A stretch of 64,000 bases of DNA from Octopus sinensis (lineage: Eukaryota), in contig NC_043012.1 of the NCBI RefSeq assembly GCF_006345805.1, forward strand, positions 26,598,001-26,662,000. The letters run 5' to 3'. Below are positions 8,298-56,588 of this stretch, piece by piece. The notes beneath the pieces were generated by a model. That model saw only the letters and a program-made list of their open reading frames with translations, ran no database searches and was not told the DNA's origin. The position numbers were made by a program, and so were the translations under genes. The stretch's first letter is position 1. Each line of letters opens with the position of its first letter.

Positions 8298-8358
<61 letters not shown>

Positions 8359-8359
<1 letters not shown>

Positions 8360-8865
8360 TGATCAGAAGTGTTATCATGTACATTGTTTTGTCTTGGTAT
8401 AAAAGATGGGCTACAGCATATATTCTGCTCAATACTACAGATTTGCTTGTCAGTTATTTGACCTTAACCACTCGAGTATGTCTCTTAGTGGCTGATGATA
8501 TATGCATCTCTGATCACAAGTAGAAGTAATGGAAGCGCATCATAGCCATGTGTTGAGAGGAATTCTTTGGGGTTAGGATAATTCACCTTTGGAAAAATGG
8601 GTGTTTCGTTCAACATCCTTAAGCAACTCTTATTCAGCGACATTTTGAGTGGGATAGGCTACTCAACATGAAGAAAATTGTAACTGGGCCCCACCTACAA
8701 GGTTAAGCGCTGTTTATGTTGATATGAAACCACCATGTCGCGTACATGTGGGTGTGATGCATGTACCTGGTGTACTCTTATCAGGCGGGTAACCGTGATA
8801 GGTAGACCGAGCTCCGTATATTTTACCCCAGTGCCACTTTGATGGCATTCATTGCTCCCTCACTC
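8359..8865 (+). mobile_element. ~555-bp (AAT)n-associated non-coding element (family C), 5'-truncated copy
   Basis: Homologous to 54046-54602; starts directly after a long (AAT)n; ends GATGGCATTCATTGCTCCCTCACTC. Confidence 0.8.
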
Positions 8866-9176
8866 GATAAATTGCATATATATAAGAACTGTAAGGGAAA
8901 AAAAAAACAGTATATAATACACATATATAACGACCACTATACACACATCGAGAGCTGCAAATATATTCAGACAGAGGAAATCACCAACAACAGATATATA
9001 CATACACGAAACTACAGCAGTAGTATCAGTTGTGTTTATTCGTTTAAAACCGAGAACAAATATATACACACATGAAATAACAACATCGATAATATACTAA
9101 CGCATAAAACGAAACTAATATTCACTACTCACACAAAAACCACAATTCCACACGCAGAGTCGCACACACACACACA

Positions 9177-16952: not shown

Positions 16953-17182
16953 AGCGGCGAGCTGGCAGAAACGTTAGCACGCCGGGCGAAATGCTTAGCG
17001 GTATTTCGTCTGCGTTACTTTGTGAGTTCAAATTCCGCCAAGGTCGACTTTGCCTTTTATCCTTTCGGGGTCGATAAATTAAGTACCAGTTACGCACTGG
17101 GGTCGATGTAATCGACTTAATACCTATGTCTGTCCTTGTTTGTCCCCTCTGTGTTTAGCCCCTTGTAGGTAATAAAGAAATA
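16953..17182 (+). mobile_element. SINE B1 with 15-bp TSD GGTATTTCTTTCTAC (16938-16952 / 17183-17197)
   Basis: Exact direct repeat; removing it restores the transposase text KEIPMKNILACATDG. Confidence 0.92.
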
Positions 17183-18667: not shown

Positions 18668-19911
18668 AAAGGAGGGCTGGGCATGCCGTGGTTGATGATG
18701 CGCAGACACGCGCTGAGACTGCGACATCTCCGGCTCTATGTAGACGACGGTGAACAGGTGTGGTCGCCGTTTGTGAGGCACGCATTCCCGCAACTCGTCT
18801 CCATGACCGAACTACAGTCGTGGATCAAAAAGAGGCCGAGGAAGGGCGATTGGCACCGCGAGTGTCGCGTTGCTCTCAAGCAACTCTGCCGTCCCGGGTC
18901 GACCTTGAGTGACTTCAACACAACCAAAGCATTCTATAGGGGATTAGTGGAGGGGAGGTACGACGACGAGCTCGGGGCGAACCTGGGCGTCGACGAGGAA
19001 TACCTGACCCGCCTGTTTTAAACGACTTTCGGCCCGGGACCTATGGACAACTTCCAGAGATCCCTGGCCTGGCGGTGCTACCGAGAAGCGCTGCCCGTTC
19101 GGGATAAGCTCTATAGGCATGGCTCGAGAAACACGGGGCCGACCTGCCCGAGATGCGGTCAGAGCGACGAAACCGATCTGCACACAATCGTGCAGTGTCC
19201 AGCAATTTCCGACCTGTGGGCTTATGTCGAACGACTGCTGTCACGTGTGGGACGTGTCGGTTTATCAGCCGAGTCTATCGTTAATATCGTCACGCCTCCT
19301 TCCTTCAAACGGGAAGGAAGAGCTATTGTTATCAAACTTGTGGCTATGGCGAAAGAATGTATCTGGTGGACGCGCCTGAAAGGATTAGAGACAAACACTT
19401 TCCTCTCTGGTCAATCTCTCATCAACTTCTTCAAGTATCACTTGAAGAGGAAAGTGAGAGTAGAGAGGCAAGTTTTGTCTAGTGAATGTTTTAAAAAAAG
19501 ATGGGTGAATGTAGCAAGGATGGCACGTATGAATGACGAAGCCACCTTGACTATGATTCTATGAACCATAAAAATTAATACAGAGAGTTGCTTATTTGCA
19601 AAAAAAAAAAAAAAAAGAAATATAACATGTGACTTCATTGACCGAGGTTACCGTGGTCTTTTCCGTAGGCTTTTCTTTCCACGGGTAAACCTCACCTGTC
19701 CTCCCCTTTACACTTCATATTGACATTTCTGTGATAACGATCCCTATTATTCATTTTTTAACCCCTCCCCTTTTTTTTTGTCCTTTTTCTTTCCTTTTAC
19801 GATCCCTTTTGATCGAAAACCACCACTCTCCTTTTTTTACCCCCAAAAGAAAAGCTCTACCTTGTAATTTGTTCTATCTGTGTGCAGCCCTGTGTGGCTA
19901 ATAAAGAAACA
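18668..19911 (+). mobile_element. L1-clade (Tx1-like) non-LTR retrotransposon, 5'-truncated ORF2 end + 3' UTR, embedded in (TATC)n
   Basis: GGLGMP..RRHALRL, then zf-RVT-like WRCYREALPVRDKL..CPRCGQSDETDLHTIVQC; one in-frame stop at 19019-19021; ORF ends 19564; UTR ends AATAAAGAAACA. Confidence 0.85.
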
Positions 19912-30649: not shown

Positions 30650-31014
30650 GGCTCAACATTTTTGGGGAGGGTGCCAGTCGATTAGATCGCAACTGGTACT
30701 TAATTTATCGACCCCGGAAGGATGACTGGCAAAGTCGACCTCGGCGGAATCTGGACTCAGAACGTAAAGATAGACGAAATACCTATTTCTTTATTACCCA
30801 CAAGGGGCGAAACATAGAGGTGACAAACAAGGACAGACATAGGTATTAAGTCGATTACATCGATTCCAGTGCGTAACTGGTACTTAATTTATCGACCCCG
30901 AAAGGATGAAAAGCAAAGTTGACCTCGGCGAAATTTGAACTCACAACGTAACGACAGACGAAATACCGTTAAGAATTTCGCCCGGCGTGATAACGATTCT
31001 GCCAGCTCGCCGCC
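30650..31014 (-). mobile_element. Nested SINE B: B1 (30784-31014) joined to a B2 body at GGTATTTCGTC
   Basis: Same junction as at 1579 and 32599. Confidence 0.85.
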
Positions 31015-42151: not shown

Positions 42152-43121
42152 GAGCAGTGCATACCATGAAAGTGACACTGGGGTACAAATATTCGAGGCC
42201 CAACATACGCATCATGATTTCAAGTCTGATAACGGTACACCAGGCACATGCATCATAACAATATGTGCGCGACATGGGGATCTGATATCAAGATAAACAG
42301 TGCATAACCTTGCAGGTGGGGTCCAGTTAGAATTTTCTTCAGGTCTTGTATCTCAACCTGCTCAAAAGGTCTCTGAATAAGGATTGTTTAAGGATGATGA
42401 ACGAAGCACTTTCGATTCCAGACGTGAACAATTCAAACCGCAAGGAATCCCCCTCAGCACATGGCAATGATGTTCTCACATTATTACTGCTCGTGATCAG
42501 AGCTGCATATATCGTCAGCCACTAAGGGACATGCTCAACTGATTAAGGTCAAGCAACTTCAGTCAAGTATGTGCTATTGGGCAAAATATTTACTGTAGCC
42601 CATGTTTTGTAACAAGAAAAATACGTACTTGATAATACTTCCAATCAGTCAAGATCAGAAGTCATAACAGTGAAAGTCTGGTATTGCATCAGGTCATTCA
42701 TTATTATTATTATTATTATTGAGTGAGAGAGCAGTGCATGCCATCAAAGTGACACTGGGGTAAAATATACGAAGCCCAATATACCCATCATGACTACCCG
42801 TCTGATAAAGGTACACCAGACACAGGCATCACAACCATATGTGCGCGACATGGTGATCTCATATCAAGATAAACAGCACATGACCTTGCAGGTGGGGCCC
42901 AGTTAGAATTTTCTTCAGGTTGAGTAGCCCATCCCGCTCAAAAGGTCCCTGAATAAGGGTTGTTTAAGGATGTTGAAAGAACCACCCATGTTTCCAGAGG
43001 TGAATTATTCAAACCTCAAAGAATCCCTCTCAACACATGGCTATGATGCTCCCCCACTACTTCTGCTCGTGATCAGAGATGCACATATCGTCAGCCACTA
43101 AGGGACATGCTCAACTTATTA

Positions 43122-43202
<81 letters not shown>

Positions 43203-43695
43203 TTGAGTGAGAGAGTAGTGCATGCCATCAAAGTGACACTGGGGTACAAATATACGAAGCCCAGTATACCCATCAGGACTACCGTCTGATAAGGGTACAC
43301 TAGGCACATGCATCACAACAATATGTGCGCGACATGGTGAATTTTCTTCAGGTCGAGTAACCCATCCCGTTCAAAAGGTCCCTGAATAAGGGTTGTTTGA
43401 GGATGTTGAATGAAAAACCCATGTTTCCAGAGGTGAATTATTCAAACCCCAAAGAATTCCTTTCAACATACGGCTATGATGCTCCCCCCACTACTTCTGC
43501 TCGTGATCAGAGATGCACATATCGTCAGCCTCTAAGGGACATGCTCAACATGTTATGGTCAAACAACTGACAGCAAATCTGTGGTATTGAGCAGAATATT
43601 TCCTGTAGCCCATCTTTTATACCAAGACAAAACAATGTACATGATAACACTTCCAATCAGTTAAGATCAGAAGCCATGAGAGCCACTGCTTATTA

Positions 43696-43769
<74 letters not shown>

Positions 43770-44304
43770 GAGTGAGAGAGCAGTGCATGCCATCAAAGTG
43801 ACACTGGGGTAAAATATACGAAGTCCAATATACCCATCATGACTACCCGTCTGATAAGGGTACACTAGGCACATGCTTCACAACCATATGTGCGCGACAT
43901 GGTGATCTCATATCAAGATAAACAGCACATGACCTTGCAGGTGGGGCCCAGTTAGAATTTTCTTCAGGTTGAGTAACCCATCCTGCTCAAAAGGACCCTG
44001 AATAAGGGTTGTTTAAGGATGTTGAATGAAACACCCATGTTTCCAGAGGTGAATTATTCAAACCCCAAAGAGTTCCTTTCGACATACGGCTATGATGCTC
44101 CCCCACTACATCTGCTCGTGATCAGAGATGCACATAACGTCAGCCTCTAAGGGACATACTCAACATGTTATGGTCAAACAACTGACAGCAAATCTGTGGT
44201 ATTGAGCAGAATATTTCCTGTAGCCCATGTTTTATACCAAGACAAAACAATGCACATAATAACACTTCCAATCAGTTAAGATCAGAAGCCATGAGAGCCA
44301 CTGC
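42152..44304 (-). mobile_element. Tandem array of four family C elements (42152-42697, 42721-43115, 43205-43689, 43770-44304) separated by (ATT)n
   Basis: The units share the end GAGTGAGAGAG(C/T)AGTGCATGCC (clipped in the first copy); the opposite ends are variably truncated. Confidence 0.9.
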
Positions 44305-53499: not shown

Positions 53500-53750
53500 C
53501 CTAAAATAATAATAATAATATTAATTATAAAATAATAATAATATAATAATAATAATCATAATATAATAATAATAATAATAATAATAATAAAATAATAATA
53601 ATAATAATAATGATAATATAAATAATAACAATATAATACTAATAATGAGGAGGAAGGATAATGATGATGATGATAAGAATAATAATAATATAATAATAAT
53701 ACGATATAATAATAACAATAATAAACTAATAATGAGGGGAGGATAATGAT

Positions 53751-53785
<35 letters not shown>

Positions 53786-53890
53786 AATATAAAATAATAA
53801 TAATAATAATATATAAAAATAATAATAATAATATAATAACAATAATAATACTATATGAGGAGAAATATAATGATGATGATGATGATGATG

Positions 53891-53931
<41 letters not shown>

Positions 53932-53959
53932 GATAATGATAAAAATAATAATAATAATA

Positions 53960-54045
<86 letters not shown>
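53500..54045. repeat. Long compound (AAT)n/(GAT)n microsatellite
   Basis: Direct reading. Confidence 0.95.
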
Positions 54046-54047
<2 letters not shown>

Positions 54048-54602
54048 GCCCTGATGCAATACCAGACAGTGGCTCTCGTGGCTTCTGATTTTAACTGATT
54101 GGAAGTGTTATCATGTACATTGTTTTGTTTTGGTATAAAAGATGGTCTACAGCAAATATTCTGCTCAATATCACAGATTTCCTTGTCAGTTGTTTGACCA
54201 TAACCAGTTGACCATGTCCCTTGTTGGCTGACAATGTGTGCATTTCTGATCACAAGCAGAAGTAGTGGGGGAGCATCATAGCCATGTGTTCAGAGGTATT
54301 CTTTGGGGTTTGGATAATTCACCTTTGGAAACACGGGTGTTTCGTTCAACATCCTTAAACATCCCTTATTCAGGGATCTGTTGAGCGGGATGGGCTACCC
54401 AACCTGAAGAAAATTGTGACTGGGCTCCACCTGCAAGGTCATGAGCAGTTAATCTTGATATGAGATCACAATGTCGCGCAAATATGGCTGTGATGCTTGT
54501 GTCTGGTGTACCCTTATCAGACGTGTAGTCATGATGGGTATACTGGGCTTCGTATATTTGTACCCCAGTGTCACTTTGATGGCATGCATTGCTCTCTCAC
54601 TC
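54046..54602 (+). mobile_element. Family C element, full-length (~557 bp), flanked by (AAT)n and AAT(AGT)n
   Basis: Starts ATGCCCTGATGCA (same end as the 42697 copy) and ends CTCTCTCACTC. Confidence 0.9.
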
Positions 54603-54604
54603 AA

Positions 54605-54637
<33 letters not shown>

Positions 54638-54679
54638 CAGCAGTTGTTGTTGCTGTTGTTATTATTGTTTCTGGAAGGT

Positions 54680-54840
54680 CATAAGTCGATGAAACTGACG
54701 CATGTGCTGGACTGGTACGTATTTCATCGACCCCGAAAGGATGAAAGGCAAAGTCGAACTTGGCGGAATTTGAACTCAGAACGTAAAGACGGACACGAAA
54801 TACCGCTAAGCATTTTGTCCGGCGTGCTAAGGATTCTGCC
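54680..54840 (-). mobile_element. SINE B2 fragment
   Basis: ATCGACCCCGAAAGGATGAAAGGC..GGAATTTGAACTCAG..GATTCTGCC. Confidence 0.8.
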
Positions 54841-54846
54841 GGTTAT

Positions 54847-54916
54847 ACATATTCTAAAATTGGAACGATACAGAGAATATTAGCATGGGCCCTGCGCAAG
54901 GGTGACACGCATAATT
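54847..54916 (+). pseudogene. U6: U6 snRNA-derived fragment (about nt 18-82 of U6)
   Basis: ACATATTCTAAAATTGGAACGATACAGAGAATATTAGCATGGGCCCTGCGCAAGGGTGACACGCA differs at 4 of 65 positions from the metazoan U6 sequence as I recall it, including the ACAGAGA box. Confidence 0.9.
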
Positions 54917-55495
54917 TTATGTACGGTCAGTTTGCAAGAGATATGAATGCCAAGACAAATACGGCAGAGGATCGGTGGCTATGGATAAGAGTGAGTGACC
55001 TGAAGCTAGAGACAGAAACACTCATATGCGCAGCTCAGGAACAAGGGGTAAGGACCATTTATATGAAGTGCAGAATGGACAATACTTCCGATAGCGATAA
55101 ATGCAGAATGTGTGGTGATAGGTGTGAAACGGTATGACACATCATTAGCGAATGCCCGAAATTGGCACAACACGAATCAAATGACGCCATGACAATGTGG
55201 CAAGAATGATCCATTGAGAGCTTTGCAGAAAGCACGGTCTACAAAGAGCATAGATGTGGTATTATGAAAGAGTCACCGAAAATGAGAACTGCAAAGTTCT
55301 GTGGGATGTAATGATCCAGTGCAATCACCTGACCAGACATAAGAAACCGGACATTGTTGTGGTGAATAACAAGAAAGAACATGCATGATTATCGACATAG
55401 CATGCCCTGGCGACAATAGGATCAATGCGAAAGAAGAAAAAACAAACTTCAGCGATTTAAAGTGGGAAATACAAAGGTTGTGGTCAATGAACAGA
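54917..55495 (+). pseudogene. Restriction-like-endonuclease (RLE) non-LTR retrotransposon fragment, R4/Dong-like
   Basis: YGQFAR..LKLETETLICAAQEQ..CRMCG..ETV*HIISECPKLA..RHDNVA..VLWD..IQC..KPDIVVV..IDIACPGD (CCHC knuckle, RHD, PD-(D/E)xK). Confidence 0.85.
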
Positions 55496-56588
55496 GGGAG
55501 AGAGAAGTAGTGAAGACCCAGAGCTGTCTTGAGGCTTTGGAGGATGCTGAGAGAGGCTACTTTGTTTAAACAGTTATCTCCCAACCATAATCTAATCGAT
55601 ATTTTTTTAATAAATACGCTTATTCTTGAATGAGTTATTGTTTTCTTTTCCTCTTATGCAAACAATCAAATTTAACACGAACGTGCTGTATATACACATA
55701 CATGTATTCACACATGGATGATGGTTGTCTCCCCTGTCAGATGAATGCAGTCTCACATTCAACTTGGTTGCTCTCATTTACTTTCATCGTTATATGTGCG
55801 CAGATATCTATCGCAATAGGATTTTATAAAATGCAAAAAAAAAAAACGGATCAAGAAATGAAAGGGAGACATTTGTGTTTCATTGAATTTAAGTGACAAA
55901 AGATTGTGCAACACTTCTGCCCCTCTCTCAGTGATCATAGTAGGTTCCATTGAAAATCATTGCAAGATGACTCGTATTATTTTGACTGCAAGTTTTATAT
56001 CAGAGTATCTTTCTCCTAGAAGACCTGCTTTCCCTACAGCTTTCTCAAAAATAATGGGAGCGTCTTCTGTCCGTGGGTAGTCATTTTAACCCATAGATGG
56101 GACCCTGACAAGCACAACAGTTCCAGCTGAATAATGATGATTAAGGGTTGACCCCACGTTCTACACAACTGCAGGACGCCTCAACTGGAACCTCACCATC
56201 GGATTCGGTTTAATGTCATACCCATGGATATATTTATATATACATACATAAATACACATATAACATAACATACATACGTATGTGTTTGTGTGTATGTGTA
56301 TGCCAACATTAATTCATGTATACATGCATATTTGCATACATACATATATACATAGTATGTGTGTGTGTATGTATGTATGCGTGTGTATGTATGTGTGTTG
56401 GCGTGGCGGTGTATATTGCTAATCTCGTGTACGTTTGGGATGCTATAAATTGTCGTCTGCTAATAGAAAATATACGACGATGTATTAAATTAGCGTCAGT
56501 CATAGACACATCATTGCTTAAGTGTCTTTGAATGTTGCATGTGTGACATGATTCTCCCTTATGCTTGGGTAGCAGAAAATCAATATGC

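What the first reader, a model, noticed from the sequence alone, without database searches (positions are those of the whole stretch)
54847..55495. U6 snRNA fragment fused to an RLE-type (R4/Dong-like) retrotransposon
About 65 nt of U6 (through the ACAGAGA box and internal stem-loop, lacking the last ~20 nt) run directly, in the same orientation, into a 5'-truncated LINE ORF (YGQFAR..CCHC..RHD..PD..D). U6-LINE chimeras are established for mammalian L1, which has an APE endonuclease and usually carries full-length U6. I do not recall one with an RLE-clade element in an invertebrate. There are two readings: template switching or RNA ligation during reverse transcription, or a LINE that inserts site-specifically into U6 genes at about nt 83-87 (compare Utopia and Keno at U2, and Dada DNA transposons at U6). 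The 3' remainder of U6 is not visible downstream, but the LINE 3' end is also lost.
Basis: partly seen in the sequence, partly recalled or inferred. Interest (0 to 1): 0.72.

Follow-up and report, generated by a model that had tools for sequence, protein, structure and literature searches.

The report
Decayed U6 fragment fused to Dong-like LINE
A 70-base piece of the U6 spliceosomal RNA sits directly in front of a broken copy of a Dong-like jumping gene, most likely a one-off by-product of that element's reverse transcriptase copying U6 RNA, and there is no sign that the element aims at U6 genes.

Summary
U6 nt 18-86 lie at 54847-54916 (Rfam RF00026, 69 bits, E 2e-15). Two bases later, on the same strand, a LINE C-terminal fragment begins at the MYGQF codons (54919-55495). 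It is spread over three frames, carries stops, and lacks its last ~55 codons and 3' UTR.

The LINE class call is largely right. A profile of the domain hits only R2 proteins in the PDB (CCHC plus PD..D endonuclease). Relatives in 93 fetched loci end in (TAA)n, and truncated copies abut (TAA)n at their 5' ends, which is the behaviour described for Dong (R4 lineage).

None of those loci holds any U6, and no U6 3' remainder lies downstream in the window. The fusion sits at the edge of a 541-bp (AAT)n array that also holds another (TAA)n-associated element. An antisense SINE has replaced the U6 5' end.

A U6-targeting LINE is therefore disfavoured (~6%). The best reading (~45%) is a single-event U6/LINE chimeric retrocopy. 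Such chimeras are already known for L1, L2 and RTE, but this one has an unusual internal U6 junction. Two separate insertions, or chance adjacency, cannot be excluded from one decayed copy. I could not search the source genome for other copies. Interest is modest.

The parts
53505..54045 (+). (AAT)n = (TAA)n microsatellite, ~181 units. It is the likely landing pad for (TAA)n-specific retroelements.
   Evidence: Tandem Repeats Finder, period 3, 181.7 copies, score 494; regex hits
54046..54604 (+). Element X, a ~560-bp non-coding repeat that follows the (AAT)n array directly. Its other copies are also bounded by (TAA)n.
   Evidence: Five further copies: 8356-8869 (+) and four head-to-tail copies at 42152-44303 (-), 79-90% identity; (TAA)n/(TTA)n positions
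54605..54635 (+). (TAG)10. It aligns with the (TAA)n tail of other X copies and so continues the microsatellite.
54674..54840 (-). tRNA-like SINE copy, antisense to U6/LINE. It lacks ~12 nt at its 5' end, and that 5' end abuts the U6 fragment. It is a later insertion that replaced U6 nt 1-17 and whatever lay upstream.
   Evidence: At least 15 copies in the window. Most copies shown (about eight of eleven) share GGCGGCGAGCT or a close variant upstream of GGCAGAA; this one does not.
54841..54846 (+). 6-nt spacer ggttat between the SINE head and recognisable U6. Only 2 of 6 bases match U6 nt 12-17.
   Evidence: Direct reading
54847..54916 (+). U6 snRNA fragment, nt 18-86. ACAGAGA, AGC and the internal stem-loop are present. 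The 5' stem-loop, the last ~21 nt, the T-run and any promoter are absent, so it is a pseudogene fragment.
   Evidence: RF00026, 69 bits; blastn 93%
54917..54918 (+). Junction dinucleotide tt, assignable to neither partner. It could be non-templated, a remnant of the U6 U-tail, or LINE sequence.
   Evidence: Direct reading
54919..55495 (+). 5'- and 3'-truncated, decayed C-terminal fragment of a Dong-like RLE LINE. It runs MYGQF, CCHC zinc knuckle, RHD, PD..D, and ends at ..LWSMN. Two frameshifts lie near 55180 and 55371, and there are in-frame stops.
   Evidence: tblastn, alignment A1, phmmer hits at 50-58% identity, PDB R2 hits

Best explanation
This is a dead, single-event U6/LINE chimeric retrocopy.

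Proposed sequence of events:
1. A Dong-like, (TAA)n-specific RLE LINE began target-primed reverse transcription in the (TAA)n array at this locus.
2. Its reverse transcriptase ran off a broken LINE RNA at the K-K|M-Y-G-Q-F codons.
3. It continued on a U6 snRNA molecule, entering at about nt 86. This happened either by a template jump or because the U6 piece had been ligated to the LINE RNA fragment beforehand.
4. The cDNA was joined to the upstream target after copying U6 only partly, or fully.
5. Later an antisense SINE inserted at the U6 5' edge, and a deletion removed the LINE 3' end together with the downstream microsatellite.

Shown: the anatomy, the LINE class, and the (TAA)n habit of its relatives. 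Inferred: the order of events and the switching step. The locus has no present function.
For: - U6 and LINE are co-oriented and separated by only 2 nt.
- The LINE is a 5'-truncated copy of an RLE element.
- 5'-truncated relatives abut their (TAA)n target directly at varied truncation points (about 12 cases). What sits upstream of a truncated copy in this group is therefore normally either target or something added during retrotransposition, and U6 is not the group's target.
- The locus lies ~870 bp downstream of an (AAT)181 array. Most of the interval is filled by another (TAA)n-bounded element, a (TAG)10 tract and a later SINE.
- U6 divergence (about 6% plus one indel) is compatible with an old event, like the decayed LINE ORF.
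- Literature: template switching to U6 is described as a general property of autonomous LINEs (L1, L2, RTE), often with 5'-truncated U6 (PMC4476161). Internal, 3'-truncated acceptor sites are known for U5 and U3 chimeras and for U1 extensions of SINEU-2 (PMC4494074). End-to-end template jumping was first shown for the R2 reverse transcriptase (Bibillo and Eickbush 2004, cited).
Against: - Only one copy could be examined.
- Both outer ends of the putative chimera are destroyed, so no target-site duplication or flanking (TAA)n can be shown.
- U6 stops at nt ~86 rather than at its U-tail. The same paper states that an internal switch has never been observed for U6/L1 chimeras.
- No second U6-LINE fusion was found among the relatives' ORFs, the 93 loci or a metagenome junction-pattern scan. 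All these searches had low power and did not include the source genome.
- Two of the locus's other boundaries are clearly secondary rearrangements, so this one could be too.
Confidence: 0.45

Rival explanations
1. Two independent insertions into the same (TAA)n landing pad. First, a 3'-truncated U6 retropseudogene formed, with reverse transcription primed internally on U6 RNA at its A/U-rich nt 83-86 by the nicked (TTA)n strand. Second, a separate 5'-truncated LINE copy inserted. The shared orientation is forced by the strand polarity of the target. A single TAA (gcaTAAtt) would be all that remains of the microsatellite between them.
For: (TAA)n-bounded elements do stack head-to-tail in one orientation in this window (four X copies at 42152-44303) and in relatives (L001). 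The window's U6 reads GCATAATT where canonical U6 has GCAAATT, which creates one TAA unit at the junction. 3'-truncated snRNA pseudogenes made by internal priming at single-stranded, target-complementary segments are the commonest class in mammals (PMC4476161).
Against: Elsewhere the microsatellite left between stacked elements is long (6-23 units; tens of units in L001), not one unit. Free trans-mobilisation of U6 is reported as rare or absent for 'stringent' LINEs that recognise their own 3' UTR. The extra T is equally well a point insertion.
Confidence: 0.15
2. Chance adjacency. An unrelated U6 pseudogene and a LINE relic were brought together by a deletion, or the LINE happened to insert into a pre-existing U6 pseudogene without any specificity.
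For: The neighbourhood is a patchwork of decayed repeats. The LINE 3' end is cut off against unique sequence with no (TAA)n. The U6 5' end is cut by a SINE. So secondary breakpoints are common here. The junction was not found elsewhere.
Against: U6-like sequence is rare: one hit in 64 kb and none in 373 kb of other loci. A direct, co-oriented junction to within 2 nt is therefore unlikely by chance. It is also the arrangement typical of known U6/LINE chimeras.
Confidence: 0.2
3. A lineage of Dong-like RLE LINEs that has switched target from (TAA)n to a specific site (about nt 86/87) in U6 genes. The U6 piece would then be the upstream half of a disrupted U6 gene.
For: Four of the five RLE clades are made up mostly of target-specific families, and these often target multicopy RNA genes (PMC4640811). 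For sequence-specific LINEs, as shown for Utopia in U2 genes, 3' boundaries are precise while 5' boundaries vary. The window's junction resembles such a 5' junction: the upstream part of a target gene followed by a 5'-truncated element. The U6 break is internal, as expected for a target site and not for a classical chimera.
Against: No U6 nt 87-107 lies anywhere downstream in the window. None of 93 loci with relatives has any U6. Relatives consistently carry (TAA)n at both ends. The locus sits beside a large (AAT)n array. There is no U6 promoter or 5' stem upstream, although the SINE could have removed them. Only Keno, Utopia, Dada-U1 and Dada-U6 had been reported to target snRNA genes as of that 2015 paper, and Dada-U6 uses nt 65-70.
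Confidence: 0.06

Closest known systems
U6/LINE chimeric retrocopies (U6-L1 in mammals; U6-L2 in platypus; U6-L1/L2/RTEX in Anolis), Doucet et al. 2015, PMC4476161
   Same: U6 lies directly 5' of a 5'-truncated LINE in the same orientation. The U6 is 5'-truncated, as in most platypus U6-L2 chimeras.
   Different: The partner here is an RLE-type (Dong-like) element, not an APE-type one, and the host looks like an invertebrate. U6 ends internally at nt ~86 instead of at its U-tail. TSDs and the LINE 3' end cannot be shown. Only a single copy is known.
Dong (Bombyx mori, Anopheles, Biomphalaria), R4 lineage of RLE non-LTR retrotransposons
   Same: C-terminal CCHC plus PD..D restriction-like endonuclease after the RT. 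Relatives are bounded by (TAA)n on the sense strand at the 3' end and at truncated 5' ends.
   Different: No RT phylogeny was done, so HERO-clade microsatellite-specific families are not excluded. The window copy itself no longer touches (TAA)n.
snRNA-gene-targeting elements: Utopia and Keno (U2), Dada-U6 (U6 nt 65-70)
   Same: An snRNA gene fragment abuts a mobile element.
   Different: No downstream half of the target is present. The position in U6 differs from Dada-U6. Dada is a DNA transposon. No recurrence was found.
snRNA-derived 5' extensions of SINEU-2 and 3'-truncated U5/U3-L1 chimeras
   Same: The acceptor snRNA is 3'-truncated, which implies an internal switch, sometimes with short junction homology.
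   Different: Those involve U1, U2, U5 or U3 with CR1- or L1-type machinery, not U6 with an RLE element.

Membership tests
U6 spliceosomal RNA (RF00026) | Covariance-model score above the gathering threshold; ACAGAGA box, AGC triad and internal stem-loop | tested here: met
   69 bits against 44; nt 18-86 are 93% identical to human U6
U6 spliceosomal RNA (RF00026) | A complete gene: 5' stem-loop, 3' end with T-run, upstream promoter | tested here: not met
   nt 1-17 are replaced by a SINE head. nt 87-107 are replaced by LINE codons. It is a pseudogene fragment only.
RLE-type non-LTR retrotransposon | C-terminal CCHC zinc knuckle followed by a PD..(D/E) restriction-like endonuclease homologous to that of R2 | tested here: met
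   Profile A1 hits only R2 proteins in the PDB (9nl2, 9nl3, 9dou), over the CCHC and KPD..D segments, E 6e-5 to 7e-4. The motifs are conserved in the alignment.
RLE-type non-LTR retrotransposon | No APE endonuclease N-terminal to the RT | tested here: inconclusive
   The window copy lacks everything upstream of MYGQF. In relative L001 the 336-aa N-terminal ORF has no Exo_endo_phos hit. The APE+RT ORF next to L003's copy is a different, complete LINE.
R4/Dong clade | RT-domain phylogeny groups with R4, Dong and Rex6 | not tested
   No RT sequence survives in the window copy and no reference sequences were to hand. The HERO clade is not excluded.
R4/Dong clade | Dong-type insertion into (TAA)n | tested here: inconclusive
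   Relatives: 20 of 54 3' ends have (TAA)>=4 about 100 nt after the stop codon. Most of the 21 other ends that I printed have 2-3 units or ATGATA variants. About 12 truncated 5' ends abut (TAA)n. The window copy has only an (AAT)181 array ~870 bp upstream and no (TAA)n at either end.
U6/LINE chimeric retrocopy | snRNA directly 5' of a 5'-truncated LINE, same orientation | tested here: met
U6/LINE chimeric retrocopy | Junction at the 3' end (U-tail) of full-length U6 | tested here: not met
   U6 similarity ends at nt ~86. Only the tt dinucleotide could be a remnant of the tail.
U6/LINE chimeric retrocopy | A single pair of target-site duplications (or target repeats) flanking U6+LINE as one unit, and a LINE 3' end with its tail | not testable with these tools
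   The 5' side is replaced by a SINE. The LINE 3' ~300 nt and flank are missing. No orthologous or paralogous copies were accessible.
Target-specific LINE aimed at U6 genes | The remainder of the target gene follows the element's 3' end | tested here: not met
   No match to U6 nt 87-107 beyond chance 10-mers anywhere in the window. However, the LINE 3' end itself is lost.
Target-specific LINE aimed at U6 genes | Recurrent insertion at the same target position in many copies | not testable with these tools
   The source genome is not searchable here. As a proxy, 0 of 93 loci with relatives contain U6.

The most novel reading that the evidence does not exclude
The fragment is the upstream half of a U6 gene disrupted by a Dong-like RLE LINE lineage that has retargeted from (TAA)n to about nt 86/87 of U6. 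It would be the first non-LTR retrotransposon known to target U6 genes.
Probability: 0.06. Interest if true: 0.7.

Novelty: new member of a known kind. Interest (0 to 1): 0.3.

Why it matters
If genome-wide copies confirm it, this would extend U6/LINE chimera formation from APE-type vertebrate LINEs (L1, L2, RTE) to an RLE-type, microsatellite-specific element in an invertebrate. R2-like reverse transcriptases are the enzymes in which template jumping was first shown in vitro. The internal U6 acceptor site would bear on whether chimeras arise by end-to-end jumps, by microhomology-guided switches, or by prior RNA ligation. As a single decayed copy, it has no functional significance and does not settle that question.

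Tried and rejected
1. Looked for further copies in the window. There is one U6 hit and one copy of this LINE only.

2. Tried to find the source contig by exact ORF look-up. The ORFs are not on record.

3. Searched the protein databases with the open U6 reading frame (frame 3 has no stop) to catch in-frame U6-LINE fusion ORFs.
 - Hundreds to thousands of U6 read-through ORFs exist (294 candidates; 1939 representatives).
 - Only the best 120 or 150 are listed, and those are full-length U6 matches.
 - Odd ones turned out to be tandem U6 arrays or plant-type U6.
 - No LINE fusion was seen.

4. Searched with a synthetic U6+LINE chimeric profile. All 120 top hits are LINE-only. None of the 18 hits whose sequences I fetched, which include all those with extended query coverage, carries a U6 peptide. 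The tool also seems to drop targets longer than ~1.75x the query.

5. Scanned metagenome contigs for U6(nt 72-82)+0-30 nt+MYGQF codons. There were 0 hits.

6. Considered that the LINE has an APE domain, because a 1014-aa APE+RT ORF lies just upstream in L003. Rejected: that ORF is a complete, different LINE with its own C-terminus.

7. Considered Dada-U6. Rejected: it is a DNA transposon with its target at nt 65-70.

8. Considered a 5'-truncation hot spot at MYGQF.
 - One relative (L060 = L045) is truncated within ~6 nt of the same point.
 - L064 turned out not to be truncated there.
 - One coincidence among ~12 truncated copies is not significant.

9. Looked for the missing LINE C-terminus or a (TAA)n remnant in 55496-55700. 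Nothing convincing was found.

10. Literature searches for U6-targeting LINEs or U6 chimeras in cephalopods or invertebrates found none.

Full report
**1. The observation**

The only Rfam match above gathering score in the 64-kb window is U6 (RF00026) at 54831-54935 (+). It scores 69 bits against a threshold of 44, with E 2.4e-15. A more permissive local rescan gave the same single significant hit.

The true U6 part is shorter than the Rfam interval. blastn against human U6 aligns nt 18-86 to 54847-54916, with 65 of 70 bases identical and one inserted T. The Rfam "5' stem" (54831-54840) is the head of a SINE on the other strand. The Rfam "3' end" (54919-54935) is LINE coding sequence. So the ACAGAGA box, the AGC triad and the internal stem-loop are present. 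The 5' stem-loop, the last ~21 nt, the T-run and any promoter are not.

Two bases after the U6 part (tt), on the same strand, a LINE fragment starts at ATG TAC GGT CAG TTT (MYGQF).
- tblastn with six relatives begins at 54919 in every case.
- It runs in three frames (54919-55176, 55185-55370, 55373-55495), with E down to 2e-44.
- There are in-frame stops.
- Nothing upstream of 54919 resembles the RT or linker regions of the relatives.
- The last ~55 codons and the 3' UTR are missing.
- There is no second copy of this LINE and no other U6 piece in the window.

**2. What the LINE is**

A composite translation finds 31 database relatives at 50-58% identity, all unnamed. The alignment shows the conserved CRMCG..E(T/S)V.H..SEC, RHDNVA, and RPDIV..(~12)..IDI/V..P.D blocks.

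A profile of that alignment hits only three sequences in the whole PDB. All three are R2 retrotransposon proteins, matched over their CCHC knuckle and KPD..D endonuclease segments (E 6e-5 to 7e-4). This supports "RLE-type".

A nearly full-length relative (L001) has three parts. The first is a 336-aa N-terminal ORF with no endonuclease/exonuclease/phosphatase (APE) hit. The second is RVT_1. The third is this C-terminal domain. An APE+RT ORF that lies just upstream of another relative (L003) is a complete, unrelated LINE.

**3. Where relatives insert**

I fetched 13 loci through exact-protein look-ups and 80 loci from JGI metagenome contigs. That makes 93 loci and 373 kb.
- Of 54 LINE 3' ends with enough flank, 20 run into (TAA)>=4 about 100 nt after the stop codon.
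- Most of the 21 other ends that I printed show (TAA)2-3 or ATGATA-type variants at the same place.
- About a dozen 5'-truncated copies, truncated at different points, abut (TAA)n directly on the sense strand.
- L003 shows a short copy with (AAT)n on both sides.

This matches published descriptions. Dong elements of silkworm, mosquito and a freshwater snail target TAA microsatellites (PMC3812793). Dong belongs to the R4 lineage (PMC3774820). Some HERO-clade families also target microsatellites (PMC4640811), and I did no RT phylogeny. "Dong-like" here therefore describes behaviour and domain architecture, not a clade assignment.

No U6 sequence occurs anywhere in the 93 loci.

**4. The neighbourhood in the window**

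Reading left to right:
- 53505-54045: an (AAT)n array of ~181 units.
- 54046-54604: element X. This ~560-bp non-coding repeat has five other copies, and they too are bounded by (TAA)n on their sense strand. Four of them are stacked head-to-tail at 42152-44303.
- 54605-54635: (TAG)10, which aligns with the (TAA)n tail of the other X copies.
- About 54674-54840, minus strand: a tRNA-like SINE. It has at least 15 copies in the window. This copy lacks the first ~12 nt of the consensus, and its 5' end points at U6.
- 54841-54846: six unassigned bases.
- U6 nt 18-86, tt, then the LINE fragment.
- From 55496: non-repetitive sequence with no (TAA)n.

The U6-LINE unit therefore sits at the downstream edge of a (TAA)n landing pad. 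At least two later events have altered it: the antisense SINE at the U6 5' edge, and the loss of the LINE 3' end.

**5. Mechanism**

Neither is seen. The group's habit is (TAA)n. The LINE 3' end is lost and the relatives come from other organisms, so this is not a refutation. I put this reading at about 6%.

*Single-event chimera.* I consider this the most likely reading (about 45%). In this LINE group, a truncated 5' end normally meets target DNA directly. Here it meets a cellular Pol III RNA in the sense orientation. That is the signature of a switch of template at the end of a broken LINE RNA, or of prior ligation of U6 to a LINE RNA fragment.

The literature makes this ordinary in kind. 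U6 chimeras are documented for L1, L2 (40 in platypus, nearly all with 5'-truncated U6), RTE and three clades in Anolis. The authors call switching to U6 a general property of autonomous LINEs (PMC4476161).

What is unusual is the internal U6 end point, at nt ~86. The same paper says this has never been seen for U6/L1 chimeras. It is, however, the rule for U5 and U3 chimeras, and it occurs in U1 extensions of SINEU-2 (PMC4494074). Three explanations are possible, and they cannot be told apart here:
- a 3'-truncated U6 RNA served as acceptor;
- the switch was guided by microhomology in the A/U-rich nt 83-86;
- a later ~17-nt deletion left only tt from the U-tail.

*Two stacked insertions (about 15%).* A 3'-truncated U6 retropseudogene and a separate LINE copy could have inserted independently into the same polar target. 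This would explain the shared orientation and the single TAA at the junction (gcaTAAtt). But spacers between stacked elements elsewhere are much longer.

*Chance adjacency or deletion (about 20%).* This remains possible in such a rearranged region. Against it stand the rarity of U6-like sequence and the 2-nt precision of the junction.

These four readings sum to about 0.86. The remainder is uncommitted.

**6. Attempts to find recurrence**

- The window's ORFs are not on record.
- No close copy of the LINE family is in the protein collection (best identity 58%).
- One U6 reading frame has no stop codon, and here it is in frame with the LINE ORF. I used this to search for fusion ORFs. U6 read-through ORFs are plentiful, but the listed ones are full-length U6 only.
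- A chimeric U6+LINE profile returned only LINE ORFs.
- A junction pattern found nothing in metagenome contigs.

These negatives have low power.

**7. Verdict**

- The LINE class is essentially right.
- The chimera reading is favoured.
- The U6-targeting reading is disfavoured.
- The claim that such chimeras are an L1 speciality needs correcting.

At best this is a new member of a known kind: a U6/LINE chimera involving an RLE-type, (TAA)n-specific element, apparently in an invertebrate genome. From memory, the SINE and microsatellite texture recalls cephalopod genomes, but I could not verify this. It is a single decayed copy with no function, and the interest is modest.

Noticed in passing
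window 54046-54604 (+), 8356-8869 (+), 42152-44303 (-, four head-to-tail copies): Element X is a ~560-bp non-coding repeat. In the copies checked (54046-54604, 8356-8869 on its upstream side, and the four tandem copies) it is bounded by (TAA)n on its sense strand. It looks either like a (TAA)n-specific non-autonomous retroelement, perhaps mobilised by Dong-like LINEs, or like a tandemly amplified [X+(TAA)n] unit.
   Followed up: partly
window, at least 15 copies, e.g. 16964-17125 (+), 30841-31003 (-), 54674-54840 (-): An abundant tRNA-like SINE. Its head is GGCGGCGAGCTGGCAGAAACGTTAGCACGCC, its box B is GAGTTCAAATTCC, and its tail is ...GGTAATAAAGAAATA. At least two 3' subfamilies exist.
   Followed up: partly
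window 53505-54045: A very long, imperfect (AAT)n microsatellite (~181 units) with interspersed (ATG)n runs.
   Followed up: partly
window 19043-19564 (+): An intact 173-aa ORF with a zf-RVT domain (PF13966, E 5e-8). It is the C-terminal remnant of a different LINE.
   Followed up: no
L060 1400-1520 (= L045, same locus): A relative of the LINE is 5'-truncated within ~6 nt of the same K-P-L-Y-G-Q-F codons as the window copy. There it abuts (TAA)12 directly. This is one coincidence among about 12 truncated copies, which is not significant. It could hint at an RNA break or an A-rich microhomology hot spot.
   Followed up: partly
proteins P0232 and P0251: The open U6 reading frame yields many spurious 'proteins' in public collections. 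These include plant-type U6 variants and tandem U6 arrays read as ORFs of up to 623 aa.
   Followed up: no
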